From Hemiscyllium ocellatum (taxonomy: Eukaryota): a stretch of 64,000 bases of DNA. Location: the NCBI RefSeq assembly GCF_020745735.1, contig NC_083428.1, forward strand, positions 44,708,217 through 44,772,216, in the 5' to 3' direction. Positions 6,892-63,016 of this stretch are shown here, in pieces; the stretch's first letter is position 1; every line of letters starts with the position of its first letter. The position numbers were made by a program, and so were the translations under genes. The notes under the pieces were generated by a model, which was given only the letters and a program-made list of their open reading frames with translations, was not told the origin of the DNA and did not search any database.

Positions 6892-7000
6892 ATGTCCAAG
6901 CCGTGCAGCCCGAACCCGGCCTCGGGGTTCGCCATCGCCTTTACCGTCACCATCAGCTTCCAGCTCGGACTCACCACTGCTTTCCCCCAGCCCCGACATG
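6892..7000 (+). CDS. LDLR-family (VLDLR-like) gene, exon 1: signal peptide
   Basis: ATG at 6892 in a CpG-rich patch encodes MSKPCSPNPASGFAIAFTVTISFQLGLTTAFPQPRH, with a hydrophobic core. Strong donor G|GTGAGT at 7001, phase 1, which matches the acceptor phase of the next exon. Confidence 0.75.
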
Positions 7001-7140
7001 GTGAGTTCTCCAACACCCTCCGTGCACTGCCCGTCCACTCCTTCTATTGGCTATCTTTAGGTCCGTAACCATGGAGACGGCTTCCTGACTGACTGCAGCT
7101 CATGTCAATCACAGCCCCATGTGGACTGCACCATGGGCGG

Positions 7141-7238
7141 GGGGGCAGGGGGTGGGGTAGTTACTGGCTCAGAGGGGAGGGAGGGCAGGGGGTGGGGTAG
7201 TTACTGGCTCAGAGGGGAGGGAGGGCAGTTACTGGCTC
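7141..7238. repeat. 40-bp tandem repeat, about 2.4 copies, in intron 1
   Basis: GGGCAGGGGGTGGGGTAGTTACTGGCTCAGAGGGGAGGGA repeated twice, plus a partial copy. Confidence 0.85.
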
Positions 7239-8009
7239 TGTGCCAAGACCCTCATGCTAGGGGACTAGCCCTGGCTCTTTGCCAGTCTACAGAGACCCAC
7301 CACTGGGAGTGTAGCTCTGGCTCTGTGCAAGGACACTCCACTGATGGACCAGCCCTGGTTTGCACAGAGGCTGTCACTGATTTTTGGGAGGGTGAATGGG
7401 AGTTGAGGGGTAGTGGGAATGTTTGGGGCTAGGAGCTGCATGGAGGGGTGAAGGGTAAGGGTGGATGTTGAAATTGGTAGGTGTAGGTGTCTGGGGAATT
7501 GTGGAAATGGAGTGTAGGTGTGTGTGATGTACGAAAGACCATAGAGGCAGGGTTGGGGGTATAGGATGGGGATGTAGGTGAAAGGAAGGGACAGTAGGAT
7601 TGGATGGTTAGGAAAGTTGAGGGTGAGGTGTCGGGGAGAGGTTGGATTTAGGGGCAGAGAATGGAGAGGGGAATGGTGTCTGCTGCAGGGTTGAAGTAAG
7701 AAAAAGCTGTGCAGCAGGAAGGATTATATTAGTCAGTGGAGGAGAGCTGCAAGGGTGAAGGTGGCAGGATGCAGGAGTGGGATTGTTATTGATAAGGCCA
7801 TCAATGACCGATTTTTGAAGTTGAACAAATGGGTATAGCTGTGGGACAAAAGTAAAAGAATTTGTCTTTCTGGTGGTAGAGGAGCATGTGAAGGATAATC
7901 AGTTTAAATGAGGATTAATGAAAGAGGTGGTTTGTGTTGGGGATATAGTAATATGTTGGGAATATTGAACATGGACTAAGGGGAAGGAAAAATAGTTTCA
8001 TGAATGAAG

Positions 8010-8990
8010 CTTTATGGCAGAGCCGTAGAACAGTTACAGCACTGAAAGAGGCCATTCAGTCTGTAAGGTCTGCACCAGCTGAATAAACTGAATAGCTATT
8101 CTAATCCTAACTGGTCTGTAGCCTCATAGATTATAGCAGTTTTGGTGCCAATCCAGGTTCCTTTTAAATTAGTTGAGCGTTGCCATCTCAACCACCCTGG
8201 GCAGTGAATTCCAGACACATCACTCTCTTTGTAAAAATGTTTTTTTTTCTCATGTTCCTTCAAATCATTTTATTACATCTAACCACCTGCTAATTGATCT
8301 TGCTGTGAGGGGAATCAGGTCCTCCCCATGCACTTGAGTCATACAGCCCCATTGAGTCTGCACTGACCCATCTACACTGATCCCACTTCCCAGCACATGG
8401 CCCCCATACCCTTGAATGTTATGACATTTGAAGTTTTCATCCATTGACTTCTTAAACATTGAGGTTTCTTACCTCTGATAACCTCCCAGGCAATGCATTT
8501 CAGGTTCCCACTACCCTCTGAAAAAGATTCTACCACCCTCTGAACCTCCTGCCCTTCGCTTTAAAATTATGCCTCCTTGTTATTTGATCTCGGCTGCTCA
8601 TTATTTGGCACACCTCAATGAAGTTAAACTCCGCCTCCTCTGTTTGTAGAAAAAAACCTCAGTCTATCCAATCTGTCTTCATACCCGCAACTTTCTTGCC
8701 CTGGTAACATTCTTCTAAATCTCCTCTGTACATTTTTGTGGAACAATTATATCCTTCCTGTGATGGGATCAGAATTGTGTGACTTAACCATGTTATCTAG
8801 CTCACCTGCCACCTTCAGGGACCTGTAAACATGTACACTGTTCTGCTGTCGATACCCTTCTGTTTATTACGTATTTCATTTGTCACTTTTCAGTCCACCT
8901 CTGACCCATTGATATCATTTGTGGTTGACAGCCTTCCTCTCTGTCAACTACTAAGCCAATTTCTTTGTGTTTTCTGAAAGTTTCCCGATC
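8010..8990 (-). mobile_element. Degenerate CR1 3' fragments
   Basis: Antisense CR1 3'-UTR and C-terminal sequence, similar to other copies in the window. Confidence 0.65.
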
Positions 8991-9273
8991 GTGCATCTTG
9001 CATTTGGGTTGAGGAAGCAAGGAATAGGCAGTTGATGGGAGAAGAAGATATTGTGTATATGTGGCACACTGTGGGACAAAAGGATGGTGAGAAAGATTAC
9101 AGATGAGGAATGGATGGGGAGGAAGTAATAGAGAGGGATTAGAAGAGGAGAGTAAAATGAGTGACATGCTGCATAGCCTGGAAGTTGATTTGAAATGAAG
9201 TTAGGAAGGCAGTCAATGTGGTTATATTGCTGGGTAGTTTATGAATTTGATTATTCACTATGATTGTTTGCAG

Positions 9274-9648
9274 GTGATGTACAATGTGGTGAGAATGAAT
9301 TCCTCTGTCTGAATGGACGCTGCGTTTCTGCACTGACACTGTGCAGTGGAAGGGATGACTGCAATGATCAGAGCGATGAGCGAAACTGTTCTGTATCAGG
9401 GTGTGGACCTCATGGGTTTCTTTGCAGCAACTCTACTGTCTGTATCTCTAAAAACCAGCTCTGTGACGGTCACCAGGACTGTGCATCAGGCGTTGATGAA
9501 TCTGATGACCTTTGTGAAAAGAGAGCACTGCAACCTGAAGGTTGTGGGGAGTTGGAGTTCCTGTGTCGTTCAGGCCAGTGCATAGAGCTTCAGTCAGCTT
9601 GTGACAACTTTCCTGACTGCAGTGATGGTAGTGATGAAGTCAATTGTG
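9274..9648 (+). CDS. LDLR-family gene, exon 2: three LDL-receptor class A modules with a linker between modules 2 and 3
   Basis: Acceptor ttgcag|, donor G|GTAAGT, 375 nt, phase 1-1. Three 6-Cys modules end in DCNDQSDE, DCASGVDE and DCSDGSDE. Same layout as LDLR exon 4 / VLDLR exon 5. Confidence 0.95.
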
Positions 9649-9769
9649 GTAAGTGTGGAATTGTGAGATGGACTTTATAAATTTTTAAATGTAGAATTTG
9701 CAATCAAACATTTGACCTAGCTGTTCTCTTTTAATGTTTATTTTCTACATGAGCCTTATTCCATCCTAT

Positions 9770-10260
9770 GTAAGATCATAAGGCAGGAGTAGATCATTTG
9801 GTCTCTTGAGCTTGCTCCAGTCTTCAGTAAGAACATGTTGGTTTGATTGTAGCCTTAATTCCACTTTTCCTGTCCACTACAACCCTTGACTCCTTTTGTT
9901 TATATATCCAGTTCAGCCTTCGATATATTCCATGTCTCATCTTCCACAGCTCTCTGGGGAAGAAAATTCAAAAAACCCAAGTCCCTCAGAAGAAATTCCT
10001 TCTTATCTTTGTCTTAAATATGAAACCCTCTTGTTCTCGATTTCTCTACAAGGGGAACCATTCTCTCACCACCTCTCAAGCTTCTGCGGTGTCTTGGATG
10101 TTTCAGTGAGGTTGTTTCTCATTCTTCTAAACTCTAGTGGGTTAGTTGTTAGAGGCATTTCTATGTTTCTGTCAATTATGCCATCATCCTCTTGAGAAGG
10201 GCCAGTGTTCACTGTAATTTTTCTTTCAGTACCTCTGTGCATGTCCACTGCAGTTCTTTT
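9770..10260 (-). mobile_element. Degenerate CR1 3' fragment
   Basis: Minus strand LEFRRMRNNLTET matches the CR1 C-terminal LEFRRLRGDLIE motif. Confidence 0.65.
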
Positions 10261-10359
10261 ACTAAATTATTCCTTTATTTAAATTTTCAAATAAATTTTA
10301 TCAATCACTTCTTGACTTTTAAAAATGTATGCATCTGTTCTTCGGTAACCAGGGAGATG

Positions 10360-13153
10360 CCAATTTTCTCCTGTTCCATTTTAGAAAACAACCTGGGAAT
10401 TGTAGACTGGAGTCAGTGATGGGTAAGTTGGAAGGGGTTCTGAGAGGCAGGATTAACATGCATTTGGAGAGGAAAGAACTAATTAGGGATAGTCAGCATG
10501 GCTTTGTGAATAATAAATTGTACATCAAACTTGATTTTTTTTGAGAATTTGACCAAGAAGGTAGATGAGGGCAGGTGGTAGACATTAGGAGACAGTGAGC
10601 ACTGCAGATGCTGGAGATCAGAGTTGAAAAGTGTGATGCTGGAAAAGCACAGCAGGTCACACAGCATCTAAGGAGCAGGAAGTCAATGTTTTGAGCAGCT
10701 ATAAATGGACTTTAGCAAGCCAAAACCTTTGTCAAAGTTCCACATGGTGGATTGGTTAGTAAAGTTCGATCACATAGGATTCAGGTGAACTTGCCAATTG
10801 AATGCAGAATTGACTTGATGGGAAACAGAGGGTGATAGTGGAGGGTTGTTTTTTAGACTGGAGGTCTGTAACCAGTGGTGCTCTGTAGGTATTGATGTTG
10901 GGTCTAAGTTATAATCTCATCTAAATTCTTTATATAAAAGCATAGTTAGGAAGTTTGCGGATAACACCAAAATTATAGTAGACCGTGAAGAAGGTTACCT
11001 AAGAATAAAAAGGATCTTGATCAATTTGGTCAGTGGGCCAAGGAGTGGCCGATTGAGTTTAATTTAGATAAATGTGAGGTATTACATTTTTGGTAAGTTG
11101 AAAATCAACACAGTTAATGGTAGCACTCTGGGGAGTGTTGTTGAACAGAGATTCCTGGGGTTCAGGTGCATAGTTCCTTGAAGGTTGCATCACAGGTAGA
11201 CAAGATAAATAAAGAAGGCATTTGGCATGCTTGCCTTCATTGCTCAGACCATTGAATACTGGAGTTGCGATGTCATGTTGCACTTGTACAGGGCATTTGG
11301 TTGGCCACCTTTGGAGTATGTGTACAGTTCTGATTGCCCTGCTATAGGAGGGAATTATTAACTTGGAGAGTGTGCAGAAAATATTTGAAGCAATGTTACA
11401 GGGCTGGAGAGTTTGAGTTGTAAGGAGAGCCTGGATAGGCTGGGAGGTTTTTTTTACTGGAGAGTATGAAGTTGAGAGATGATGTTCTCTAGGGTATGGG
11501 AGTTCAAAACTAGAGGGCCTAATTTTAAGACAGAGGAGAAAGATTTAAAAATTTGAGGTGCAACTTTTTCACACAGAAGAATGAACTGCCAGAGGAAGTA
11601 GTAGATACCTGTACAGTTACAACATTTAAAAGACATTTGGAAAGGTACATGAGCAGGAAAGGTTTAGAGGGTTTTGGGCCAAATGCAGGCAAGTGGGACT
11701 AGTTTAGTTGGGAATCCTACTGGCATGGACCGAAGGGTCTGTTTCTGTGCTGTATGACTCTGACACTCGGACTATAAATTGTCTCACAAATTTGATTGTG
11801 TTTATTGAAGAGGGTGACCGAGAAGATAGGTACTCTCTACATGAACTTAACATATGAGGAAAGTTTGATGGCTCTGGGTCTATACTTGGAGTTTTGAAGA
11901 GGGGGGTGGAAATATAATTGAAACATACAGAATACTGAATGGCCTGAACAGAGTAGATGTTGGGAAGGTGTTTCCATTGGTAGGAGAGACTAGACCCAAG
12001 GACACAGCCTTAGAGTAAAGGGAAGACCTTTTAGAATGGAGATAAAGAGAAACGTCTTCAGCCAGAGAGCGGTGAATCAATGGAATTCATTACCACAGAA
12101 GGCTGTGGAGGGCAGGTCATTGAGTATATTTAAGACTGAGATAGATAGGTTCTTGAGTGTCAAGGGTTATGGGGAGAAAGTGGGAGAATGGGGTTGAGAA
12201 ACGTATCAGCCATGTTGAATGGTGAAGCAGACTCAGTGGGCTAAATGGTCTAATTTTCTGCTCCTGTGTCTTATGGACTTTATCAAGACCTTCCACAAGG
12301 TTCGATATTGTAGATTGGTTAGAGTTGAAAAGTGCGTTGCTGGAAAAGCACAACAGGTCAGGCAGCATCTGAGGAGCAGGAGAATCGATGTTTCAGGAAT
12401 GTGGTGATGATGAAGGGCGTATGCCCAAAATGTGGACTCTCCTGCTCCTCGGATGCTGCTTGACCTGCTGTGCTTTTCCAGTGCCACACTTTTCGACTTT
12501 GACTCTCCAGCATCTGCAGTCCTCACTTTCTCTCATGGTAGACTGGTTAGCATGATTAGATCATATGGGATCCAGGGAAGGCTAGCCATTTGGATACAAA
12601 GTTGGCTTGATGGTAGGAGACGGAGTATAGTGGGAGAGGGTTGTTCAGATTGGAGGCCTGTGACCAGCAGTGTGCTGCAAAGATTCAGACTATTGTTTGT
12701 CGTTTATATAAATTATTTGGATGAGAATATAGGAGGCATAGTTTGTAGTTGACACCAAAATTGGTCATATGATGGACAGTGAAGGTTATCTATAGATCAG
12801 CTGGACCAGTGGGCCGAGGAATGGCAGTTGTATTTTAATTTAGATAAATGTGAGTGTTGCATTTTGGTAAGACAAACCAGGGCAGGGCATGTTCTGATAA
12901 TGGTAGGACCCTGGGGAATGTCTTCAAACAAAGAGACCTAGGGGTACAGATACATAGTTCCTTGAAAGTGGCGTCACAGTTAGACAGTGTGGTGAAGAAA
13001 GTGTTTGGTCCACTTGTAATCAATGTTCTGACCAATGAAGAAGAGTTGGAACATCATTTACCAGTTGTACAGGACATTGGAAAGGCTGTATTCGGAGCAC
13101 TTCTTGCAATTCTAAAGTGGAAACGATGTAAAAATAGGTTTACAAGGATTTTA
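10360..13153 (+). mobile_element. Stacked degenerate CR1 RT/3' fragments, with PLE inserts at ~10588-10697 and 12323-12534
   Basis: LIRDSQHGFV, WRPVTS, HFGKTNQGR and QRDLGVQIHSSLKVA motifs. The last copy breaks at ~13153 and resumes at ~17806. Confidence 0.85.
12323..12534. mobile_element. Inverted pair of PLE pseudo-LTR fragments (aged)
   Basis: A minus copy is followed by a plus copy. Flanked by near-identical TAGATTGGTTAG (12311-12322) and TAGACTGGTTAG (12539-12550). Confidence 0.8.
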
Positions 13154-13156
13154 TGG

Positions 13157-16100
13157 AGACCATACGACATAGGAGTGGAAGTAAGGCCATTCAGCCCATC
13201 GAGTCCACTCCGCCATTCAATCATGGCTGACGGGCATTTCAACTCCACTTAGCAGCGTTCTCCCCGTAGCCCTTAATTCCTCGAGACAACAAGAATCTAT
13301 TGATCTCTGCCTTGAAGACATTTAGCGTCCCGGCCTCCACTGCACTCCGTGGCAATGAATTCCACAGGCCCACCACCCTCTGGCTGAAGAAATGTCTCCG
13401 CATTTCTGTTCTGAATTGACCCCCTCTAATTCTAAGGCTGCGTCCACAGGTCCTAGTCTCCTCGCCTAACGGAAACAATTTCCTAGCGTCCACCCTTTCC
13501 AAGCCATGTATTATCTTGTACGTCTCTATTAAGTCTCCCCTTAATCTTCTAAACCCCAATGAATACAATCCCAGGATCCTCAGCCATTCCTCATATGTTA
13601 GACCTACCATTCCGAGGATCATCCGTGTGAATCTCTGCTGGACACGTTCCAGTGCCAGTATGTCCTTCCTGAGGTATGGGGACCAAAACTGGACACAGTA
13701 CTCCAAATGGGGCCTAACCAGAGCTTTATAAAGTCTCAGTAGCACATCTCTGCTTTTATATTTCAACCCTCTTGAGATAAGTGACAACATTGCATTCGCT
13801 TTCTTAATCACAGACTCAACCTGCATGTTTACCTTTAGAGAATCCTCGACTAGCACTCCCAGATCCCTTTGTACTTTGGCTTAACTAATTTTCTCACCAT
13901 TTAGAAAGTAGTCTATGCTTTTATTCTTTTTTCCAAAGTGCAAGACCTCGCATTTGCTCACGTTGAATTCCATCAGCCATTTCCTGGACCACTCTCCCAA
14001 ACTTCTGTAGCCTCCCCATTTCCTCAGTACTACCTGCCTGTCCACCTAACTTCGTATCATCTGCAAACTTCGCTAGAATGCCCCCAGTCCCTTCATCCAA
14101 ATCATTAGTATATAATGCGAACAGCTGCGACCCCAACACTGTACCCTGCGGGACACCGCTCGTCACTGGCTGCCATTCCGAAAAAGAACCTTTTACATAG
14201 AACATAGAACATAGAAGGATACAGCGCAGTACAGGCCCTTCGGCCCTCGATGTTGCGCCGACCGAATCCTACCTAACCTATACTAGCCCAATAACTTCCA
14301 AATGCCTATCCAATGCCCGCTTAAATGACCATAAAGAAGGAGAGTTCACCACTGATACGGGCAGGGCATTCCATGAACTCACAACCCGCTGTGTGAAGAA
14401 TCTACCCCTAACATCTGTCCTATACCTACCACCCCTTAATTTAAAGCTATGTCCCCTAGTAACACCTGACTCCATTAGCAGTAAAAGGTTCTTAGTATCT
14501 ACCCTATCTAAACCCCTAATCATCTTATACACTTCTATCAGATCTCCCCTAAACCTTCTCTTCTCCAATGAGAACAGCCCCAAGTGCCTCAGCCTTTCCT
14601 CATAAGATTTTCCTACCATTCCAGGCAACATCCTGGTAAACCTCCTCTGCACTCGTTCTAAAGCTTCCACATCCTTCCTATAGTATGGCGACCAAAACTG
14701 CACACAATACTCCAGATGAGGCCTCACCAGAGTCTTATACAACTGCAACATGACCTCAGGACTCCGGAACTCAATTCCTCTGCCAATAAAGCCCAGTACA
14801 CCATATGCCTTCCTCACAGCACTATTTACCTGGGTGGCAACTTTCAGAGATCTGTGTACATAGACACCAAGATCCCTCTGCTCATCCACACTACCAAGTA
14901 ACCTACCATTAGCCCAGTAATCCATCATCTTGTTATTCCTACCAAAGTGAACGACTTCGCACTTAGCTACATTGAATTCCATTTGCCACATTTCCGCCCA
15001 GCTCTGCAACTTATCTATATCCCGCTGTAACCTACCACTTCCTTCCTCACTATCCACAACTCCACCGACTTTTGTGTCATCCGCAAACTTGCTTACCCAG
15101 CTTTCAAGTCCTTCCTCTAGATCATTTATAAAGATAACAAAAAGCAATGGTCCCAAAACAGATCCTTGTGGTACACCGCTAGTAACTGCGCTCCAAGATG
15201 AACATAATCCATCAACTACTACCCTCTGTCTCCTTCCAGCCAGCCAATTCCTAATCCAAACCTCTAATGTATCCTCAATGCCATACCTCCGAAGTTTTAG
15301 CATTAGCCTACCATGGGGAACCTTATCGAACGCCTTACTAAAATCCATATACACAACATCTACAGCTTTACCCTCGTCCACTTCCTTAGTCACCTTCTCA
15401 AAGAACTCAATAAGGTTTGTGAGGCACGACCTGCCCTTCACAAAACCATGCTGGCTATCCCTGATCACGTTATTCCTACCCAGATGTTCATAAATCTTAT
15501 CCCTTACCATTCTCTGTAAGACTTTGCCCACCACTGAAGTCAGACTCACTGGCCTATAGTTACTAGGGCTATCCCTACTCCCTTTCTTGAACAATGGGAC
15601 CACATTCGCTATCCTCCAGTCCTCTGGTACTATTCCTGTTGACAACGACGACATAAAAATCCAGGCCAATGGCTCTGCTATCTCCTCCCTAGCTTCCCAT
15701 AGGATCCTGGGGTAAATGCCATCAGGCCCAGGAGACTTATCTATATTCATCCTTTCCAATATTCCCAAAACCTCTTCCCTGCATATTTCCAGGGCATCCA
15801 TTCTAATTATTTGTGATTCCATATTCACATCAGCAACAGTGTCCTGTTCCTGAGTGAATACTGATGAAAAGTACTGATTTAATGTCTCTCCAATCTCCTC
15901 TGCCTCCACACACAACTTCCCACTACTATCCTTGACTGGACCGATACCTACCCTAGTCATCCTTTTATTCTTGACATACCTATAGAAAGCCTTTGGGTTT
16001 TCCCTAATCCTACCAGCTAAAGACTTTTCATGTCCCCTTCTCGCTTCTCTTAGCTCCCTCTTTAGCTCCTTCCTGGCTACCTTATAACTCTCAATCGCCC

Positions 16101-17805
16101 CTACTGAACCTTCACGCCTCATCTTTACATATGCCGCCTTCTTCCCTTTCACAAGGGACTCCAATTCCTTACTAAACCACGGCTGCCTCACAAGGCCCTT
16201 TACACCATGCCTGACTGGTACATACCTATCGAGGACACGCAGTAGCTGCTCCTTGAATACTCCCCACATCTCATTAGTGTTCTTCTCTTGAAGCCTGTTT
16301 TTCCAATCCACACATCCTAAGTCATGCCTCACTGCATCATAATTTCCCTGCCCCCAGCTATAGCTCTTGCCCTGCGGCGCACGATTATCCCTCTCCATCA
16401 CTAAAGTAAAAGTCACCGAGTTGTGGTCACTGTCCCCGAAGTGCTCACCTACCTCCAAGTCTAACACCTGGCCTGGTTCATTACCTAGAACCAAATCCAA
16501 TATAGCCTCCCCTCTTGTTGGCCTGTCGACATATTGTGTCAGGAAACCTTCCTGCACACATTGTACAAACACCGACCCATCTAATGAACTCGAGCTATAG
16601 CTCTCCCAGTCAATATCTGGGAAGTTAAAGTCCCCCATAACAACCACCCTGCTACCTTCACTCTTTTCCTGAATCATCCTCGCAATATTATCCTCTACTT
16701 CTCTAGGACTATTAGGAGGCCTGTAGAAAACACCTAACAGGGTGACCTCACCTTTCCTATTTCTAACCTTTTATCCCAACTCTCTGCCTTCTGTCAGACA
16801 GCCAATCCTCAATCATTCCCAGCAGCTCGTCTCGAACACCATGGGCCCCTCACCTTGCTCAGCAGCCTCCCGTGTGGCACCTTATCAAAGGCCTTTTGAA
16901 AGTCTAGATAGACCACATCCACTGGGTTTCCCTGGTCTAACCTACCTGTCACCTCTTCAAAGAATTCCAACAGGTTTGTCAGGCATGACCTCCCCTTACT
17001 AAATCCATGTTGACTTGTTCTAATCAGACTCTGCTCTTCTAAGAATTTAGAAGCCTCATCCTTAATGATGGATTCTAGAATGTTACCAACAACCGAGGTG
17101 AGGCTAATTGGCCTATAATTTTCCATCTTTTGTCTTGATCCTTTCTTGAACAAGGGGGTTACAACAGCCATCTTCCAATCATCTGGGACCTTTCCTGATT
17201 CCAGTGACTCTTGAAAGATCTCAACCAATGCCTCCGCTATTTCCTCAGCCACCTCTCTCAGAACTCTAGGGGCCAGGAGATTTAGCAATTTTAAGACTTT
17301 TTTTTAACTTTTCTAGCACTATCTCTTTTGTAATGGCAACCATACTCAACTCAGCCCCCTGACTCCGTTTAATTGTTGGGATATTACTCATGTCTTCCAC
17401 TGTGAAAACTGACGCAAAGTACTTGTTAAGTTCTCCTGCTATTTCCTTATCTCCCATCACTAGGCTTCCTGCATCAGTTTGAAGTGGCCCAATGTCTACT
17501 TTTGCCTGGCGTTTGTTTCTTATGTACTGAAAGAAACTTTTACTATCATTTCTAATATTACTGGCTAGCCTACCTTCATATTTGATCCTCTCATTTCTTA
17601 TGACACTCTTTGTTATCCTCTGTTTGTTTTTATAGCCTTCCCAATCTTCTGATTTCCCACTGTTCTTGGCCACTTTATAGGATCTCTCTTTTTCTTTAAT
17701 ATATTTCCTGACTTCCTTTGTCAGCCATGGTGGTCTAATCCCTCCCCAGATAATCTTTCTTTTCTTGGGGATGAACCTCTGTATAGTGTCCTCAATTATA
17801 CCCAC
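13157..17805 (-). mobile_element. Young 5'-truncated CR1 LINE (family A), split by a second CR1
   Basis: ORFs 17266-17805, 16809-17288, 13921-14205 and 13239-13856 form a collinear ORF2 (YRPISLTSVVG, DFQKAFDKVPH, GVPQG, FADDTK) with few lesions. Confidence 0.95.
14196..16764 (-). mobile_element. Very young 5'-truncated CR1 LINE (family B) with an uninterrupted 799-aa ORF2 fragment
   Basis: ORF 14278-16677 runs from the APE endonuclease C-half (GDFN, SDH) through the full RT (QGSVLGP, FADD) to the C-terminus. 3' tail is (TTCTATG)n. AACCTTTTA flanks both sides (14187-14195 and 16765-16773). Confidence 0.97.
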
Positions 17806-18230
17806 AACTGTAGGACTTGAGTTTTAATGAGAGGTTGGATAAGCTGGGGACTTTTTTCACTGGAGCTTAGGGGACTGAGGGATGAGCTTATAAATATTTT
17901 GAAGTCATGAGGGGCATAGATATGGTGAATAGCTGAGACCTTTTGCCCAGGGTAGGAGAGTCCAAAACTAGAGGACACAGATTTAAGTTGAGAGGGGAAA
18001 GATTTAAAAGGGATCTGAGAGTGTGGTGCATATATGGAACAAATTGCAAGAGGAAGTGTTTGAGGCAAGTATTATAACCTTTAAAGGGACATTTGGATAG
18101 ATACATGAATAGAAAAGGTTTAGAGGGATAAGGGCCAAACACTGGCAAATGGGACTTGTTCAGTTTAGGAAACCAGGTCACATGGATGATTTGAGCCATA
18201 GGTTTTGTTTCTGGGCCGTATGGCCCTATC
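17806..18230 (+). mobile_element. CR1 3' end, continuing the copy broken at 13153
   Basis: CR1 C-terminal and 3'-UTR sequence, collinear with the fragment ending RFTRIL at ~13153. Confidence 0.8.
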
Positions 18231-18234
18231 CCTT

Positions 18235-19150
18235 CTAAATCTTCTGCCCCTTTCTTTAAAACTATGCTCCCTTGTCACTGATCCCTCCACCAAAGGGAAA
18301 AGTTCCTTCTGTCTATACCTCTCAAAATGTTATACGTCTTAATTATCTCTCCCTTCAGTCTTCTCTGCTGCAAGGAAAACTACCCCAATCTGTCCCATCT
18401 CTCTTCGTAACTCAGCCTCTCCACCACAGGCAACGTCTTGAAAAGTTGTCTCGTGCCTCTCGAGTGCACTCACGTTCCTCCTATAATATGGATTCCAGAA
18501 CTGTACAGAATGAATATTAGCTGTGGTCTAACCAATGTTTTCTACAAATCTAGTATCACCTCCCTGCTCTAAACTCTATGCCTTTTGTAATAAAGGCAAG
18601 TATCCCTTATGCTTTTTTAATCACTTTATCCACTGTCCTGCTACCATAAGGGATCAGTATACATGCATGCCACGTTTTCTGTTCCTTGGTGCTTCCCAGG
18701 GTTTTACCGTTTATTGTGCCCTGTTTGATCAGCCCAAATGCATCACCTCTGACTTTTCAGATTGCCACTGATTGGTGCATCTGACCACCCTGGCTCAATC
18801 CTTCCATAATCTACAGCTATTCTCACTATTTACCACCTGAAAAAATATTTTTAACGTTCACAAACCTATTGATCCACCTTCCTGCATTCAAGTCTAAATC
18901 ACTTATATACACACCACAAACAGTAAGGGCTCCACCACCGATCCCTGTGGAACCAGGCTTCTAGTCACAAAAACACCATTCGACCATCACCCTCTGCTTC
19001 TTGCCCACTTTCCCTGGACCATATCGGCTCTTACCTTTGCTACCAGGCTCCCATGTGGGACCTTTTCAGAAGCTTGCTGAAATGCATTGTTGTCATCAAC
19101 ATACCTGGTTACCTCTTTGAAAATTTTATTCAAGTTGATCAAAGGTTTTG
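18235..19150 (-). mobile_element. Degenerate CR1 RT/3' fragment
   Basis: Minus strand FKEVTRYVD...KVPHGSLV. Confidence 0.75.
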
Positions 19151-19514
19151 ACCACAAAAATAAAGATGACAAAGCACAGTGCTAGAAATGGAATATATAA
19201 TAACCAGAGGTGAGGAGAGCAGTGGGCTTTAGCAGGACTTCAGCCTTTCATTACTGTATCTGGTACACGTCAGGGAGATTGATGAACTTGATGCTGGAGG
19301 TGAAAAACCTGTCCAACCAATTGCTATGCTGATGCCAAGCTGTATACATCGTTTGGACTAATACAGCGTATTCAAGATGAAAATATCACAAAGTTACATC
19401 ATGGATATGACTTTGCGGCATACCCCATCAAAGACCGATCCATGCAATTGCATTATCAATTTTGAATCACTTACAGATTCAGTGTTGCTTCGTTTATGTT
19501 CGTTTTTTTGACAG

Positions 19515-19634
19515 ATCGGAATGAGTGCTTGGTGGCAAATGGACAGTGTTCTGATTATTGCTGGGACCTACCTTTAGGATATGAATGTGCTTGTCCAACT
19601 GGATTGGAGCTAATAAATCATTTCACATGTGAAG
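19515..19634 (+). CDS. LDLR-family gene, exon 3: EGF-A
   Basis: Acceptor tttgacag|, donor G|GTGAGT, 120 nt (same size as LDLR exon 7). Encodes [40 protein letters not shown]. Confidence 0.95.
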
Positions 19635-19735
19635 GTGAGTTTACCTACATCTGATTAAAAGTATTCCAGCTCACAGTGATACATAAAATTAGCATTTTAG
19701 TGAGGAAAAATTAACCATGGTTTTTTTGAGTAAGC

Positions 19736-20652
19736 TGAAAATGTGTTGCTAGTTAAAACACAGCAGGTCAGGCAGCATCCAAGGAACAGGAAATTCGACG
19801 TTTCGGGCCAGAGCCCTTCATCAGGAATGAGGAGAGTGTGCCAGGCAGGCTAAGATAAAAGGTAGGGAGGAGGGACTTGGGGGAGGGGCGATGGAGATGT
19901 GATAGGTGGAAGGAAGTCAAGGTGAGGGTGATAGGCTGGAGTGGGGTGGGGGCGGAGAGGTCAGGAAGAAGATTGCAGGTTAGGAGGGCGGTGCTGAGTT
20001 GAGGGAACCGACTGAGACAAGGTGGGGGGAGGGGAAATGAGGAAACTGGAGAAATCTGAGTTCATTCCTTGTGGTTGGAGGGTTCCCAGGCGGAAGATGA
20101 GGCGCTCTTCCTCCAACCGTCGTGTTGTTATGTTCTGGCAATGGAGGAGTCCAAGGACCTGCATGTCCTCTGTGGAGTGGGAGGGGGAGTGAAAGTGTTG
20201 AGCCATGGGGTGGTTGGGTTGGTTGGTCCGGGCGTCCCAGAGGTGTTCTCTGAAGTGTTCCGCAAGTAGGCGGCCCGTCTCCCCAATATAGAGGAGGCCA
20301 CATCGGGTGCAGCGGATGCAATAGATGATGTGTGTGGAGGTGCAGGTGAATTTGTGGCGGATATGGAAGGATCCCTCGGGGCCTTGGAGAGAAGTAAGGG
20401 AGGAGGTGTGGGCGCAAGTTTTACATTTCCTGCGGTTGCAGGGGAAGGTGCCGGGAGTGGAGGTTGGGTTGGTGGGGGGTGTGGACCTGACAAGGGAGTC
20501 ACGAAGGGAGTGGTCTTTGCGGAACGCTGATAGGGGAGCGGAGGGAAATAGATCCCTGGTGGTGGGGTCCATTTGGAGGTGGCGGAAATGACGGCAGATG
20601 ATACGCTGTATACGGAGGTTGGTGGGGTGGTAGGTGAGAACTAGTGGGGTAC
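19736..20652 (-). mobile_element. 5'-truncated Penelope-like retroelement: GIY-YIG endonuclease plus 3' pLTR
   Basis: ORF contains PLVLTYHP...CNRRKCKTC...IIYCIRCTRCGLLYIGETGR...FREH...GMN. Perfect 15-bp TSD TTTTTTTGAGTAAGC at 19721-19735 and 20653-20667. Confidence 0.95.
19793..19828 (-). ncRNA. Minimal type I hammerhead ribozyme (PLE-associated)
   Basis: Minus strand ATTC-CTGATGA-A-GGGC-TCTG-GCCC-GAA-ACGT-C-GAAT. Core intact, stem I ATTC/GAAT, stem II GGGC/GCCC, palindromic ACGT helix III, GUC cleavage triplet. Confidence 0.85.
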
Positions 20653-21469
20653 TTTTTTTGAGTAAGCATTGACCTAAAAAAGGGGGACAGTTGCTGAAAG
20701 AGTAATATACGCAACTGTTCAACCCTGGTGTATCTTAGAAATATGAAGAAAAAAATATGAAGCCAGGAGAAGAACTCATTAAAATGCTCTACATAATAGG
20801 ACATTGCCAGTAAATGTATGAAATATTGGAAAGAAAATGAGAGAATGTGAAGCAATAACTACTAATGTACTGTATTGCTCTGAGTTTCATTTCATGATGT
20901 ATGAATGTCATCATTGAAGCCTGCAATCTTGCAGCTTTTACAGAGTTGGCACGTCAAAAGAGTGAATGGGGGAGTGGGGGAAGTAAAATATATATTGAGA
21001 AATGAAATGCATGAAACAGTTCTTCAGCTGTTTGTCAAAGTGGTTCTTGATTGGCCTAAAGACCTGTCAGGAATTTGGGATAAGAACTGTAATGTTGTCC
21101 TGCTGACAGCAACAGTGACATTTTGTTGCTTTACTGCATATCAGTTCAAAACAGCCTTCACCTGTTACTGAATTCTGCACCTACCAGAACATCAATCACC
21201 ATCAGTATAGGAGATCATTAATTACCACCTTCCTTGCATCTCTGAGACCATCTCTCAGTGCAACACGAACGTGTATATTTCTACTTCATGTTCTGCAGGA
21301 TTGGTGGACTCTTTATTTTTGCTTTCAGAAAGCCAAGTGCAGACTGGATGTTCACTATCATTATTTTAATCATACACATTGAGAAGTCAGAAACAGCTCA
21401 TGTATTGTTACCTCTGTTGTTCTTCTGACCTATGTGCAAACTTGCAGATGAGGACCAAGAATTGGTCTT

Positions 21470-33713: not shown

Positions 33714-33839
33714 ATGTGGATGAGTGCAGAAACCCTGACTTGTGTGACCAGATTTGTCTAAACCTGCCTGGATCATATGTCTGTGAGTGCTCCCAGGGAT
33801 ATCAGAAGGACACACACACTGGCACTTGCCAAGCTGCGG
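33714..33839 (+). CDS. LDLR-family gene, exon 4: calcium-binding EGF-B
   Basis: Acceptor ttttcag|, donor G|GTAGGT, 126 nt (as LDLR exon 8). Encodes [42 protein letters not shown]. Confidence 0.95.
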
Positions 33840-35755: not shown

Positions 35756-35927
35756 GAGAGGAACCATTCATGATTGTCACTAACCGTGGAGATATCAAGA
35801 GCATAAATATGAACAGAACGGAATATTTGGAGATAGCTGATAGATTGCAGAGCGCAACAGCTCTCAGCATGGATATCACCTCATCAACCATCTTTTGGTC
35901 TGGTGACAAACATCATGGAATTTTCAG
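35756..35927 (+). CDS. LDLR-family gene, exon 5: YWTD beta-propeller, part 1
   Basis: Acceptor gctag|, donor AG|GTAAAC, 172 nt, phase 1-2 (as LDLR exon 9). Encodes GEEPFMIVTNRGDI...IFWSGD...GIFR. Confidence 0.93.
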
Positions 35928-37676: not shown

Positions 37677-37895
37677 GACATCCGTAGACCCAAACAGAAA
37701 GGAGATCAGACAGATTTTGGGTGATGTACAAAGTCCTGGTGGAATTGCTGTGGACTGGATCTACAGCCACATCTACTGGACTGATTCTAGAGCCAGAACT
37801 TTATCTCTTGCTACTCTGGATGGATTGAAAAGGAAGACCCTGTTCAGTACGAACCTAAGAGAGCCTACAGCTATAGCAGTTGACCCAGAATCGGG
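37677..37895 (+). CDS. LDLR-family gene, exon 6: YWTD propeller, part 2
   Basis: Acceptor ccacag|, donor GG|GTATGT, 219 nt, phase 2-2. Encodes ...[15 protein letters not shown]...[27 protein letters not shown]. Confidence 0.95.
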
Positions 37896-42838: not shown

Positions 42839-42957
42839 CTTCTTATACTGGGCCGATATAGGAAAACCAGCAAAAATTGAAAAGGCGGGGATGAATGGAG
42901 TTGGCAGAAGGATACTAGTCAGCGTTGGAATTGAGAAGCCAACTGGGATTGCATTGG
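42839..42957 (+). CDS. LDLR-family gene, exon 7: YWTD propeller, part 3
   Basis: Acceptor caacag|, donor G|GTAAGC, 119 nt (as LDLR exon 11). Encodes [39 protein letters not shown]. Confidence 0.95.
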
Positions 42958-46556: not shown

Positions 46557-46689
46557 CTGATCTTATCTCTGCATCACTTCCACCTTCCTGTCTATTTTTC
46601 ATAACCCTGCAACCTATTACTTATTAAAAATCAGTTTATATGCTCCTTAAATTTACTCACCTGTCCAGTATCCACCACATTCTGGGGTG

Positions 46690-48099: not shown

Positions 48100-48470
48100 T
48101 TTCTGTATTTCAAAGCACTTTACCACCATTGAAGTCACAATTGGAAACTTGGAAATGCGGCAGCTAATTTGTACATAGCAAGCTGCCAAAAATAGCAACG
48201 TGATGATGGTCAGATAATCTGCCTTGGTGATGTTGATTGAGGCACAGATGTTGGCCAAGGGAAAGGAGTGAACTACCTTGTGCCATTGGATATGTTCTAC
48301 TCTCCTGAGAGAGCAGTAACTCTGAATTCACATGTCACCCAAAAGACTATTTCTAACAACACCATCCTTCCTCAGTAGAATATCGTCTAAGATAGGTGCC
48401 CAAGTCTTTAGAATGGGACTTGAACTGATAATCTTCTGATTCAGAGGTGAGAATGCTACCCGCTGAAGTG
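48100..48470 (-). mobile_element. Ancient tRNA-derived SINE (DeuSINE/SacSINE1-like); a related piece lies at ~59875-60050
   Basis: Minus strand tRNA-like head TCAGCGGGTAGCATTCTCACCTCTGAATCAGAAG...GTTCAAGTCCCA. The body resembles SacSINE1 from memory only. Confidence 0.5.
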
Positions 48471-49536
48471 CGCTGATGTTTGCCCTCTTTCTGAAGAATT
48501 CGATTGGGAATGCTGACTAGGAGAAATTTTAGAATCAAAGTCTGTTGTTGTCCAATTAAAGATTTTAGTTTGATTATTTATGCTATCCTGAATTTCTAAC
48601 CACACCGTTCTCACTCCTTCCCTATTTTAAGCTCTATTCTGAACAATGTTCCCTCTAAACCACAGGCTATGTAGCTGCTGGGAACCTATATGCATGTCGA
48701 TCAATGAGCCAATGTATTGTTTCACTTCCAACAGTGCGCACAAGGACCTCCGAGCTCCACACAGCAGCAAGTTACACAGAATGTTGACATTGAGCCACTT
48801 CTTAGTTTGCTTACCTCTCTCCTGATTTGATGTCCTTCTCGCTTTCCCTTAATCCTTCCTCCTTAGAAATCCTTCAACTCTTATTTGTGGTCACTCTCTG
48901 AAACTCCTATCTGTGTTCATGTTCTCAAACATTTTGTGTAGTTTTCTATTTCTGTGATTTCTATCACAGTTGAAATGATCACTGATCAATTTCTTGCTCC
49001 CTTGTCACACTTGGCACCATTTCCTTCTGCATCAGCCTGAAATGCCCTGTCACCTTTCACTGAAGTTTAAAACCCCTTTGACCTTCCATTTGCTATAACG
49101 TGCTCAGCCTTTGGTCTGCTCTCCAGTCCCTTTTATTCTCTGCTGCCATGGACACATATGGGGAGCTTGAAATTCTTTAAAGTTTGCCTAAACTCTGAAG
49201 AGCTTGTGTCCTGAAAAGTTTGAAATGTAGATTTCATACATGTTTTAAAATGTAGATTTCATACATGTTTTAACTACACGCTTAAAGTGTGAATGGTAAA
49301 ATAAAATCCAGAAATCATGGAAACCTCGAACCAGAAAGTAATGATAGGATAAGGTACCAATGTGATCCTTCCCAAAACACATAGTCAGTCTGTATTTTCA
49401 ATGTCTGAGCTCATTTGGAATTGGTTTCTGCAAGGAGACAGCCTTTTTAAGGAGCATTGTAGAAATAAATGGAAACAAGCCTTTTGTAATCCTTCAAGTA
49501 TCAACAAAGTTAAAAGTTTCTATGCATCATTTTCAG

Positions 49537-60636: not shown

Positions 60637-61315
60637 GGCTGATTACTAGTATTCTCATTTTCCATCCAATTGGAAATATTATTTGAGGGTACCTGAGAAT
60701 TGAGTGCTAATTTGATGCTGGGAACTAACAGTAACAAGTCTGCATTTACAGACAGCTGTGTTGGGATTTACTGGATTCATCCGTTTGGATGATCCTTTTC
60801 CTTCTAGCTGCTGAAATTCTGTGTGCCTTTGTTAAAGAGGCAATGTCAGCCTGAAAGTTTTATTAGAGAGACTGAAGATGTAAAACAAGACATGCCCCTT
60901 CTGTGAATTAGTGATCTTAATGCAATGCATGATAAATCAGATGGAAATAAAAACTGCTGAAAACCTTAAAGAAAAATGAGCCAGTGATGGAATATTAACT
61001 TGAGGCTGATTGACCTGCTTTGTGTAACATCTTTGATGTTAAGTGCCAGTAAAGTTTCCCCACTGCCCTTTGTCTCATCTTCCTTCTGTATCAAAGCAAA
61101 ATTGTTGCAAAGGATTTCACTCTCGGAATTAATTCTCCTCATTGTGACCGAGGTCAGGAAAACCGATTGTGGCAGAAACAGTGAACTATTCCATTTCATG
61201 GTGAAAATCTCAGCGATGGGCCCAGGTGGTCAGACCTCCAGATTGTCAGGGATTAAACAGACGACTGAAGCCCCTCATGTATAGGAGTTGCCTGGAAAGG
61301 TTAAGGTTCTGATGG

Positions 61316-61435
61316 TAAAAAGTGAGGTCTGCAGATGCTGGAGATCAGAGCGGAAAATGTGTTGCTGGTTAGAGCGCAGCAGGTCAGGCAGCATCCAAGG
61401 AACAGGAAATTCGACGTTTCGGGCATAAGCCCTTC
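61316..61435 (-). mobile_element. PLE pseudo-LTR fragment truncated inside the hammerhead core
   Basis: 12-bp TSD AGGTTCTGATGG at 61304-61315 and 61436-61447. Confidence 0.88.
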
Positions 61436-62292
61436 AGGTTCTGATGGGCAAGTCCCCTAATGCCAGGATCCTCTGTAAATGTCTCTGACTGGCATAATTC
61501 CATACTTACATAATGGCTATGTTAAAACCTGGTCCAGCAGTTGGTAACCTTCACAGTCAATACCCACCCTCGGCACTTTGCTGACCTGACCAAAGCAACA
61601 CCTACCTACCCAAACTGACACAACTACCTCCCTACCAACTGTCCAGTCGACAACCTGACCATATCCCAACTCCTCACCCACCACCCAGTCCAGACCCTTA
61701 TACTTGCCGTATAGTAGCTAATGCTAGAGGAGGAGGAGGAGGCATGTCCTGCTTACTCTGATTCCGACAGGGATGGCTGAGTTTGCTGCACCTCACATTT
61801 CTTTGATAGCATGGATTGGGAAAAATTGTGGAAGAAATGTGCAGCAGTTAGTCTTCATGTGTGATGACAATTGCAATCAAAGTTGTTGCTTCTTGGAAGG
61901 TTCAGCACCTTATTTTAGTGAAGTATGTAGCTGGATTGTGGTGCTGTGGATTTCATCCCACTGTCCTGTAGATGTCAGTATGTGCAATGGCTCCAATTCT
62001 TATCTCTCTGTCAATGATCCAGCCCCGCTCCAAAATTTGAGAATTGAGATTAAGGACGGTAATGCAGTATCAGCAAGTGCTACAACTCAATACAATATTT
62101 GGGTCAAAATCTTGGAGCACTCTCCCAAACAACATTGTGAGTCTCTCCCTGTCAAGTGGATTGTAGCAGCTCGAGGAGGTGGCTCACCACCTTCTCAATG
62201 ACCAGTAGGGATGGGCTGTAAATTTTGGCCCAATCAATGTGACACCTATATGTCTAAATGAATAAAATTGACCAGACTATACCGAGCTTTTT

Positions 62293-62637
62293 GGAGTCCC
62301 TGTTACAGTGGTGTCACTGGTGTTGGGATCCCTGTTACAGTGGGTGTCACTGGCGTTGGGATCCCTGTTACAGTGGGTGTCACTGGCGTTGGGATCCCTG
62401 TTACAGTGGGTGTCACTGGCGTTGGGATCCCTGTTACAGTGGGTGTCACTGGCGTTGGGATCCCTGTTACAGTGGTGTCACTGGCGTTGGGATCCCTGTT
62501 ACAGTGATATCACTGGCGTTGGGATCCCTGTTACAGTGATGTCACTGGCGTTGGGATCCCTGTTACAGTGGTGTCACTGGCGTTGGGATCCCTGTTACAG
62601 TGGTGTCACTGGCGTTGGGATCCCTGTTACAGTGATG
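62293..62637. repeat. 32/33-bp minisatellite, about 10.5 copies
   Basis: Unit GGGATCCCTGTTACAGTG(G)GTGTCACTGGCGTT, head to tail with no spacers. Confidence 0.97.
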
Positions 62638-62997
62638 TTTGTACAGAATAACACCACCTAATAATTCAGTTATTTTTCCTGAACTTTATAGATGTGGATT
62701 TGTTAAAGCTGCAATTTTGAAAGTAAAAGTTATGGGTCAACACAAAATCATGTTCTGATTTGATGCTGAGTTCCATGTAAGTGGAAAGAATAGCTATACA
62801 CATATGAACATCAGCATTTAGCCAATAATGTGAGCAAGGACCAATTAAGAGTGACGTGGGATCTGAGAGTTAGATAAAAGTAGAATTCATACTGTCTCTT
62901 TGCAGATGTTAGTGTGAGAATGAAGCTCTCTGAAGGCTATCATGTTTCCTTACTGCGTTAAATCTGCTCATCTCCATCTGTCTGTTTGTTTTTATAG

Positions 62998-63016
62998 GTT
63001 TTTGCTATCTGAATGA
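62998..63016 (+). CDS. Probable terminal coding exon (adds QFLLSE*), followed by a ~1 kb 3' UTR
   Basis: Strong pyrimidine tract ending ttttatag| at 62997. Phase 2 gives a short C-terminal extension, as in LDLR exon 18. Other acceptors (62691, 62905) cannot be excluded. Confidence 0.4.

What the first reader, a model, noticed from the sequence alone, without database searches (positions are those of the whole stretch)
6892..63016. An intact but non-canonical LDLR/VLDLR-like receptor with only three ligand-binding modules
Seen: 12 exons splice in phase with no stop, giving signal peptide, 3 LA modules, EGF-A, EGF-B, YWTD propeller, EGF-C, stalk, TM and tail. I found no other LA exon in intron 1 or intron 2, which are largely transposon-derived. 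Known: LDLR has 7 LA modules, VLDLR 8 and LRP8 7-8. They share these exon sizes (120, 126, 172, 119, 140, 142), and only the triple-LA exon is kept here. Motifs such as [18 protein letters not shown] and LREP.IAVDP look most like VLDLR, but the protein appears far more diverged than a shark VLDLR orthologue should be. Inference: this is a distinct paralogue. It could be the 'missing fourth' whole-genome-duplication ohnologue of LDLR/VLDLR/LRP8 retained in cartilaginous fish, or a lineage-specific VLDLR duplicate.
Basis: partly seen in the sequence, partly recalled or inferred. Interest (0 to 1): 0.85.

Follow-up and report, generated by a model that had tools for sequence, protein, structure and literature searches.

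The report
Short shark LDL-receptor relative, possibly long-form CD320
The window holds an intact gene for a short LDL-receptor-type membrane protein with only three ligand-binding modules; it is conserved in sharks, rays and chimaeras, is already predicted in RefSeq as "VLDLR-like", and may be the cartilaginous-fish, full-length form of the vitamin-B12 carrier receptor CD320.

Summary
Thirteen coding exons (6892-63016, + strand) splice in phase, with canonical sites except one GC donor. They give a 697-aa protein: signal peptide, 3 LA modules, EGF-A, EGF-B, YWTD propeller, EGF-C, repeat stalk, TM and tail. My model is identical to RefSeq XP_060702336.1 (Hemiscyllium ocellatum, "VLDLR-like"). 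No other LA module exists anywhere in the 64 kb.

The same short gene occurs in at least 17 cartilaginous fishes, chimaera included. It keeps 3 LA modules (2 in skates), all cysteines, a tail without NPxY and a conserved C-terminal SQQxLL. It changes about twice as fast as VLDLR but is clearly constrained.

It is not the VLDLR, LDLR or LRP8 orthologue. Relatives carry those genes separately, and grouping with LDLR or LRP8 is rejected (AU p<0.001). The tree gives (LDLR,LRP8) and (short family, all VLDLR), the pattern expected of a fourth ohnologue. A cartilaginous-fish-specific VLDLR duplicate is not rejected (p=0.27).

One paper's supplementary table already labels the chimaera member "CD320". 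The best short-protein match of its LA region is axolotl CD320. My own test of that link was inconclusive.

Verdict: real, conserved and already annotated, but uncharacterised. The scan has no record of it on other DNA.

The parts
6892..7000 (+). Exon 1: start codon and signal peptide (109 nt, ends in phase 1)
   Evidence: ATG and GT donor. Same start as the RefSeq model, which is identical to mine. Hydrophobic stretch at residues 13-31.
9274..9648 (+). Exon 2: three LA modules in one 375-nt exon, 18 cysteines
   Evidence: It aligns best with the triple-LA exon of relatives: VLDLR LA4-6, LRP8 LA4-6 and LDLR LA3-5 score 100-110 bits, against about 70 bits for other LA triples.
19515..19634 (+). 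Exon 3: EGF-A (120 nt)
   Evidence: Pfam FXa_inhibition/cEGF.
33714..33839 (+). Exon 4: EGF-B, calcium-binding type (126 nt)
   Evidence: Pfam EGF_CA at residues 202-240.
35756..35927 (+). Exon 5: first propeller blade (172 nt)
   Evidence: PDB scores: human VLDLR 43.9 bits, LDLR 37.5, LRP8 28.1.
37677..37895 (+). Exon 6: propeller blades 2-3 (219 nt; I recall the LDLR counterpart as 228 nt)
42839..42957 (+). Exon 7: propeller (119 nt)
49537..49676 (+). Exon 8: propeller (140 nt)
50839..50980 (+). Exon 9: last propeller blade (142 nt)
55213..55347 (+). Exon 10: EGF-C (135 nt)
   Evidence: The predicted propeller plus EGF-C superposes on LDLR 1IJQ: TM 0.93 by target, rmsd 1.8 A.
57499..57762 (+). 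Exon 11: Ser/Thr/Pro-rich stalk made of 7.3 copies of a 30-nt repeat, then the first half of the TM helix; GC donor
   Evidence: Only the GC-donor version reproduces the RefSeq protein and the orthologues' TM sequence.
58960..59113 (+). Exon 12: rest of the TM helix and the cytoplasmic tail, with FYSPVH where relatives have FDNPVY
62998..63016 (+). Exon 13: last 6 codons (..QFLLSE) and the stop
   Evidence: The same C-terminus is seen in the Chiloscyllium and Stegostoma proteins.

Best explanation
The window carries the epaulette-shark copy of a functional gene found throughout cartilaginous fishes. It encodes a short type-I receptor of the LDLR/VLDLR/LRP8 core group. Shown: three Ca2+-cage LA modules come from the family's ancestral triple-LA exon. 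They are followed by EGF-A, EGF-B, a six-bladed YWTD propeller and EGF-C, then a repeat-built stalk, one TM helix and a 44-residue tail. Shown: the family is the sister of all jawed-vertebrate VLDLR genes. It lies on a different chromosome from VLDLR and LRP8, with a Kv-type potassium-channel gene just downstream. Inferred: it is the fourth product of the early vertebrate genome duplications, and bony vertebrates keep this lineage only as the truncated CD320 (about 50%). The alternative is an old VLDLR duplicate specific to cartilaginous fishes (about 35%). Inferred mechanism: the LA modules bind a ligand in a Ca2+-dependent way, and the EGF-propeller unit releases it in acidic endosomes. Because NPxY is replaced, uptake would have to use another signal, perhaps the conserved C-terminal SQQxLL. 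The ligand is unknown. A cobalamin carrier (as for CD320) or a yolk or lipoprotein particle (as for VLDLR) are the candidates. All three modules lack the usual aromatic residue, which argues for a narrowed or changed specificity.
For: The exon model is in phase and identical to RefSeq XP_060702336.1. No other LA module exists in the window. Orthologues of 608-736 aa occur in about 17 species, including Callorhinchus. They have 3 LA modules, 2 in skates. All cysteines and the acidic-cage residues are invariant. The rate of change is 1.5-2.4 times that of VLDLR for the same species pairs, with 54-64% identity between elasmobranchs (sharks and rays) and the chimaera. Careful tree: family 100/100, family+VLDLR 98/96, VLDLR without the family 97/93, LDLR+LRP8 99/95. 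AU tests reject family+LDLR (p=0.0006) and family+LRP8 (p=0.00015). The fold model matches the LDLR YWTD-EGF pair at TM 0.93. The contigs differ from those of VLDLR and LRP8. A Kv gene lies 4.5-5.6 kb downstream on the same strand in Chiloscyllium, Carcharodon and two skates. This mirrors vldlr-kcnv2a in teleosts (PMC12480657). CD320 link: PMC10015161 lists C. milii XP_007909401.1, a member of this family, under CD320. Axolotl CD320 is the best named match of the N-terminal profile at 203 bits, against 140 for the next protein, and consists of two triple-LA units.
Against: The AU test does not reject a clade of this family with cartilaginous-fish VLDLR (p=0.27), nor a position outside all three receptors (p=0.14). 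The family sits on a long stem (0.55), so its basal position could be long-branch attraction. The tree of the triple-LA region joins it to axolotl CD320 with support of only 14/0. Each axolotl unit scores no better (91-100 bits) than VLDLR LA4-6 (100-110 bits). The PLxWRCD motif of CD320 (PMC4947154) is absent. I saw no expression data and no ligand data. Wider synteny (KANK3, ANGPTL4) could not be examined.
Confidence: 0.75

Rival explanations
1. The gene is a VLDLR duplicate specific to cartilaginous fishes. It arose on their stem, moved with a KCNV2-like neighbour to another chromosome, lost five LA modules and then diverged fast. It would be unrelated to CD320.
For: The AU test does not reject a clade with cartilaginous-fish VLDLR (delta lnL 7.3, p=0.27). 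Cartilaginous fishes did duplicate VLDLR repeatedly (VLDLRc2/c3, PMC10015161), and the multi-unit proteins nest with their VLDLR in my tree. The long stem of 0.55 allows long-branch attraction. The Kv neighbour mirrors VLDLR-KCNV2.
Against: The ML tree puts the family outside all VLDLR with 97/93 support. The known VLDLR duplicates are tandem on the VLDLR chromosome, whereas this gene is on another chromosome in every species checked. A published table groups the chimaera member with CD320.
Confidence: 0.35
2. It is the ordinary shark orthologue of VLDLR, LDLR or LRP8 that has lost LA exons, or whose LA exons lie outside the window.
For: The exon sizes are those of the family, and the triple-LA exon is homologous to theirs.
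Against: Canonical 8-LA VLDLR and LRP8 exist in related sharks and rays on other contigs. A chimaera LDLR is listed in PMC10015161. Same-species identity to VLDLR is only 45-51%. AU tests reject LDLR and LRP8 grouping. The signal peptide directly precedes the triple-LA exon in about 17 species.
Confidence: 0.02
3. It is a decaying duplicate (unitary pseudogene in the making), as suggested by the loss of NPxY and of the LA aromatic residues.
For: FDNPVY is replaced by FYSPVH. All three LA modules lack the aromatic residue before the fourth cysteine.
Against: The frame is open and every splice site is intact. All 36 domain cysteines and the Ca2+ ligands are conserved from shark to chimaera. The unusual tail and LA signatures are themselves conserved across the family. 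The rate is only about twice that of VLDLR.
Confidence: 0.03
4. It is the cartilaginous-fish orthologue of Lrp13 (LRX+1), the second fish vitellogenin receptor.
For: Both are VLDLR-like receptors outside the classical trio, and kcnv2b is named in the gene list of the eel paper's vldlr/lrp13 synteny figure, without saying which locus it lies at (PMC9935665).
Against: Lrp13 has 7-13 N-terminal LA modules, extra EGF and YWTD repeats and a characteristic LA module next to the TM helix. It clusters away from VLDLR (PMC12480657). None of these features is present here. No Lrp13 sequence could be fetched for a direct tree.
Confidence: 0.03

Closest known systems
VLDLR (very-low-density lipoprotein / vitellogenin receptor)
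   Same: Closest full-length relative: 45-51% identity within a species, and sister group in the tree. Same exon sizes and phases, same domain order after the LA region, and a Kv gene downstream on the same strand.
   Different: It has 3 LA modules instead of 8. The aromatic residues in the LA modules are lost, and NPxY is replaced by SPVH. It lies on a different chromosome and evolves about twice as fast.
CD320 (transcobalamin receptor; Tva in chicken)
   Same: A small LDLR-family receptor whose ectodomain corresponds to the triple-LA unit. Axolotl CD320 consists of two such units that are 43-44% identical to exon 2. The chimaera member is filed under CD320 in PMC10015161. The axolotl CD320 tail likewise has no NPxY.
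   Different: The one bony-vertebrate CD320 I could examine (axolotl) has no EGF-A/B, propeller or EGF-C; the shark protein keeps them all. The PLxWRCD motif that CD320 uses for Ca2+ and transcobalamin contact is absent. Orthology was not resolved by my own tree.
VLDLRc2 / VLDLRc3 of cartilaginous fishes (Ohishi et al. 2023)
   Same: They are also extra VLDLR-like genes of cartilaginous fishes. Each of their repeated units is about 46% identical to this protein over its LA-EGF-propeller region.
   Different: They are 1,900-2,100-aa multi-unit proteins, tandem to VLDLR, and they nest within cartilaginous-fish VLDLR in the tree. This gene has a single unit, lies elsewhere and branches outside.
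LDLR and LRP8 (ApoER2)
   Same: Same modular plan and gene structure. The predicted ectodomain matches ApoER2 5B4X and LDLR 3M0C/1IJQ.
   Different: They lie on the other side of the tree, and grouping with either is rejected. They have 7-8 LA modules and an NPxY tail.

Membership tests
LDLR/VLDLR/LRP8 core receptors | LA modules with six cysteines and an acidic Ca2+ cage | tested here: met
   Three modules, 18 cysteines, and the D/E cage largely kept. LA-a has S or N at the first Asp position.
LDLR/VLDLR/LRP8 core receptors | EGF-A, EGF-B, six-bladed YWTD propeller, EGF-C | tested here: met
   Pfam hits. Five YWTD-type motifs. AF2 model with pLDDT around 90 in the propeller, which superposes on LDLR 1IJQ at TM 0.93 and rmsd 1.8 A.
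LDLR/VLDLR/LRP8 core receptors | Shared exon sizes and phases, including one exon that encodes three LA modules | tested here: met
   Exons of 375, 120, 126, 172, 119, 140 and 142 nt. The triple-LA profile best matches the corresponding triples in VLDLR, LRP8 and LDLR. The reference exon sizes are from my own knowledge.
LDLR/VLDLR/LRP8 core receptors | Seven or eight LA modules | tested here: not met
   Three here and in the orthologues, two in skates. Controls give 7-8.
LDLR/VLDLR/LRP8 core receptors | FxNPxY internalisation and adaptor motif in the tail | tested here: not met
   FYSPVH in the window, [CF]YSPV[HN] in most elasmobranchs (sharks and rays), WYPVY in the chimaera.
VLDLR orthologue | Falls inside the jawed-vertebrate VLDLR clade and is the only VLDLR of the genome | tested here: not met
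   It branches outside all VLDLR (97/93), and canonical VLDLR exists in related species on other contigs. The AU test against a clade with cartilaginous-fish VLDLR is inconclusive (p=0.27).
CD320 | Orthology by tree | tested here: inconclusive
   The triple-LA tree joins it to axolotl CD320 with support of only 14/0. A published table groups the chimaera member with CD320. Only one CD320 sequence could be fetched.
CD320 | Ectodomain of LA modules only, with no EGF-precursor domain | tested here: not met
   The full EGF-propeller-EGF unit is present.
CD320 | PLxWRCD motif in the LA modules (PMC4947154) | tested here: not met
   The corresponding stretches read SALTLCSG, SKNQLCDG and ELQSACDN.
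CD320 | Binds holo-transcobalamin; lies in the syntenic position of CD320 | not testable with these tools
   There is no binding assay, and only about 10 kb of flank could be seen in relatives.
Lrp13 (LRX+1) | LA module next to the TM helix, and 7-13 N-terminal LA modules | tested here: not met
   No LA module lies after EGF-C, and there are three N-terminal LA modules. The features are taken from PMC12480657 and PMC9935665.

The most novel reading that the evidence does not exclude
CD320, known in mammals as a tiny two-LA vitamin-B12 carrier receptor, is the truncated survivor of the fourth 2R ohnologue of LDLR, VLDLR and LRP8. Cartilaginous fishes alone would keep its ancestral full-length form, with EGF-precursor domain and propeller. 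That would date the loss of the release module to the bony-vertebrate stem. It would also give a natural 'before' state for asking how a multi-ligand lipoprotein receptor became a single-ligand vitamin receptor.
Probability: 0.45. Interest if true: 0.7.

Novelty: new member of a known kind. Interest (0 to 1): 0.5.

Why it matters
The LDLR/VLDLR/LRP8 trio is a textbook set of genome-duplication paralogues, yet none of the papers read here discusses the origin of CD320. This is a conserved, full-length, three-LA receptor that branches beside VLDLR and has been filed with CD320. It makes that origin testable with synteny and a broader tree. It is also a natural minimal LDLR-type receptor: three modules, no NPxY and no stacking aromatic residues. 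Such a protein is useful for asking which parts of the design are needed for ligand capture, release and uptake. For shark biology it is a candidate receptor for vitamin B12 or yolk uptake, and no functional data were found in the papers searched.

Tried and rejected
1. Propeller and LA pieces make poor queries for the large protein library, because giant multi-propeller proteins (LRP2/4/6) outrank the family by summed score. The first-blade exon worked.

2. A search with the whale-shark N-terminal fragment found only one fragment.

3. The profile search returned a single CD320 (axolotl). Other short hits (carp, Seriola, Ranitomeya) are LA fragments of other receptors.

4. The triple-LA tree is unresolved.

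The Lrp13 paper PMC4617131 is not held.

6. Flanking DNA of the shark orthologues was unavailable for Chiloscyllium, Carcharodon, Mobula and Hemitrygon. Only the skate loci came with DNA, and there the Kv gene is frameshifted. The Kv subtype is therefore known only as Kv2-like.

7. I did not attempt dN/dS, because the only orthologous DNA (skate) is too distant.

8. The pseudogene, Lrp13 and ordinary-orthologue readings were considered and rejected for the reasons given under the rival explanations.


Full report
OBSERVATION

The + strand carries a complete LDLR-type gene.
- The ATG is at 6892, and exon 1 (109 nt) ends in phase 1.
- The 375-nt exon at 9274-9648 encodes three LA modules with 18 cysteines.
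- The next exons are 120, 126, 172, 219, 119, 140, 142 and 135 nt long. All have AG/GT boundaries and are in phase.
- The stalk exon (57499-57762) is 7.3 copies of a 30-nt repeat, rich in Ser, Thr and Pro codons. It runs into the first half of the TM helix.
- Two in-frame donors exist there. The GC donor at 57762 is the one that reproduces the orthologues' TM sequence.
- Exon 12 (58960-59113) completes the TM helix and the tail. A 19-nt exon (62998-63016) adds QFLLSE and the stop.
- The 697-aa product is identical, residue for residue, to RefSeq XP_060702336.1, "very low-density lipoprotein receptor-like" of Hemiscyllium ocellatum. The window is therefore epaulette-shark DNA, and an automatic annotation already holds this model.

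No LA exon is hidden. An HMM of the three modules was run against all six frames of the 64 kb. It finds only exon 2, and the next best hit has E=0.15. Pfam sees three LA stretches, class-B repeats and EGF domains. Intron 2 contains a LINE ORF of 799 aa with endonuclease and reverse transcriptase domains on the minus strand.

A CONSERVED FAMILY

The first-blade exon, searched against 1.8 billion cluster representatives, recovered a 650-aa Narcine protein that is 53% identical over the full length. It also recovered large multi-unit "LRP1-like" proteins of cartilaginous fishes.

A full-length search and cluster look-ups then gave proteins of 608-736 aa, all named "VLDLR-like" by NCBI. They come from:
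- Sharks: Chiloscyllium punctatum (88% identity), C. plagiosum, Stegostoma, Rhincodon (partial), Scyliorhinus canicula and S. torazame, Mustelus, Heterodontus, Carcharodon, Cetorhinus and Pristiophorus.
- Rays and skates: Amblyraja, Leucoraja, Rhinoraja, Narcine, Hemitrygon and Mobula.
- Chimaera: Callorhinchus (57% identity).

All have a signal peptide followed directly by three LA modules. Skates have two, because the genomic exon lacks the middle module. The models of three rays lack EGF-B.

Every domain cysteine and most Ca2+-cage acids are invariant. The unusual features are themselves conserved:
- No aromatic residue stands before the fourth cysteine of any module.
- The tail reads [CF]YSPV[HN] in most elasmobranchs (sharks and rays) and WYPVY in the chimaera, in place of FDNPVY.
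- The C-terminus is SQQSLL, or SQQFLLSE in orectolobiforms.
- The stalk is a different decapeptide repeat with a different copy number in each lineage.

For the same species pairs the core region differs 1.5-2.4 times as much as VLDLR does. It is still 54-64% identical between elasmobranchs and the chimaera. This is a constrained, functional gene, not a decaying copy.

An AlphaFold model built on a 29-sequence alignment has pLDDT around 90 in the propeller. Its propeller plus EGF-C superposes on the LDLR YWTD-EGF pair 1IJQ (TM 0.93 by target, rmsd 1.8 A). The best whole-ectodomain match is ApoER2 5B4X.

WHICH RELATIVE IS IT?

The LA exon is the family's triple-LA exon. Its profile scores 100-110 bits on VLDLR LA4-6, LRP8 LA4-6 and LDLR LA3-5, and about 70 bits on any other triple.

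A careful ML tree of the EGF-A to EGF-C region (55 rows, 399 columns, LG+C20) gives:
- the short family, 100/100, on a stem of 0.55;
- the family plus all VLDLR, 98/96;
- VLDLR without the family, 97/93, including bony-vertebrate VLDLR, cartilaginous-fish VLDLR and the multi-unit proteins;
- LDLR plus LRP8, 99/95.

This is the symmetric 2+2 shape expected from two rounds of genome duplication.

AU tests:
- Family with LDLR: rejected (p=0.0006).
- Family with LRP8: rejected (p=0.00015).
- Family outside all three: not rejected (p=0.14).
- Family with cartilaginous-fish VLDLR: not rejected (p=0.27).

The gene is therefore VLDLR-affiliated and distinct. Whether it split before or after the divergence of bony and cartilaginous fishes is not settled by sequence alone.

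GENOMIC POSITION

Contig lengths show that the short gene, VLDLR and LRP8 lie on different chromosomes in Mustelus, Heterodontus, Stegostoma, Carcharodon, Hemitrygon, Chiloscyllium and Narcine. The multi-unit genes share the VLDLR chromosome in Heptranchias. That fits the VLDLRc2/c3 tandem duplicates of Ohishi et al. 2023 (PMC10015161).

A gene with BTB_2 and Ion_trans domains lies 4.5-5.1 kb downstream on the same strand in Chiloscyllium and Carcharodon. The two skates have the same gene with shared frameshifts. Its best PDB relative is Kv2.1. In teleosts vldlr is flanked by kcnv2a (PMC12480657), so the pair receptor-plus-Kv looks duplicated as a block. This excludes retroposition. It fits either genome duplication or an old segmental copy.

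THE CD320 LEAD

The supplementary table of PMC10015161 lists C. milii XP_007909401.1 and a zebra-shark gene under "CD320", together with human, frog and gar CD320. It lists separate LRP8 and LDLR groups, including a C. milii LDLR. XP_007909401.1 belongs to the cluster of the Callorhinchus member of this family. The main text does not discuss it.

A profile of the family's N-termini was searched among proteins of 110-350 aa. After a Logan fragment that is probably the same gene, its best hit is axolotl "CD320 antigen" (203 bits; the next protein scores 140). That protein is two tandem triple-LA units, each 43-44% identical to exon 2, followed by a TM helix and a tail. It has no EGF or propeller.

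My own tests do not prove orthology:
- Per unit, the axolotl score (91-100 bits) equals that of VLDLR.
- The triple-LA tree joins the two groups with negligible support.
- The PLxWRCD motif of CD320 (PMC4947154) is missing.

From memory, and unverified here, human CD320 sits beside KANK3 and ANGPTL4. These are paralogues of the KANK and ANGPTL genes near LDLR, VLDLR and LRP8, which would fit a fourth paralogon. I put CD320 co-orthology at about one half.

HOW IT PROBABLY WORKS

By its parts it is a Ca2+-dependent, ligand-binding, recycling receptor. The three LA modules capture a ligand. The EGF-propeller unit, intact and highly conserved, provides acid-triggered release as in LDLR. The mucin-like stalk holds the ectodomain away from the membrane.

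NPxY is lost throughout the family, so ARH, Dab2 or Dab1-type adaptors are unlikely to bind. The conserved C-terminal SQQxLL is a candidate dileucine-type signal; this is inference only. The ligand is unknown. The candidates are a cobalamin carrier if the CD320 link holds, or a yolk or lipoprotein particle by analogy with VLDLR. The concerted loss of the stacking aromatic residues points to a specialised interface.

NOVELTY

The sequence is in RefSeq under a generic name, and one paper files a member under CD320 without comment. I found no paper that describes the architecture, its conservation or its meaning for the origin of CD320. I class it as a new member of a known kind, of moderate interest.

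Notes s1-178380 and s1-178458 on the tail and the LA modules agree with what I see. The scan has no record of this gene on other DNA.

Noticed in passing
window 3957-6721: A 2.8-kb G-rich minisatellite (units like GGTTGGGGTTGGGGA; periods of 16, 40, 83 and 133) ends about 170 bp upstream of the start codon. The G-runs are on the coding strand, so it could form G-quadruplexes in the promoter or 5' UTR region.
   Followed up: no
window 14278-16677 (minus strand): An uninterrupted 799-aa LINE ORF with endonuclease and reverse transcriptase domains lies inside intron 2. It may be a young element.
   Followed up: partly
window 62297-62638: A 32-bp minisatellite of 10.6 copies with 97% matches lies in the last intron, just upstream of the terminal 19-nt exon.
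   Followed up: no
window 57499-57783: The stalk exon is a 30-nt repeat whose copy number differs between close species (697 aa here, 659 aa in C. punctatum). It uses a GC donor at 57762. An in-frame GT donor lies 21 nt downstream, and the C. plagiosum RefSeq model reads on past the GC site.
   Followed up: partly
L001:11681-11941 (Amblyraja radiata): In skates the LA exon is 261 nt and encodes only two modules, because the middle one is cleanly deleted. This parallels the degenerate middle segment of human CD320.
   Followed up: partly
L001:40063-40970 and L002:41062-41991: The Kv-channel gene downstream of the receptor has the same frame breaks in Amblyraja and Leucoraja, and no gene is called there. 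It is called as an intact gene in Chiloscyllium and Carcharodon. It may be a skate-specific pseudogene.
   Followed up: partly
P0005, P0030, P0029 (Narcine, Hemitrygon, Mobula): The RefSeq models of three rays lack the EGF-B exon, while skates and sharks keep it. This could be a real loss or exon skipping in the models.
   Followed up: no
P0176 (Ambystoma mexicanum CD320 isoform X2): Axolotl CD320 carries six LA modules as two tandem copies of the triple-LA unit, 60% identical to each other. CD320 architecture therefore varies widely among vertebrates.
   Followed up: partly
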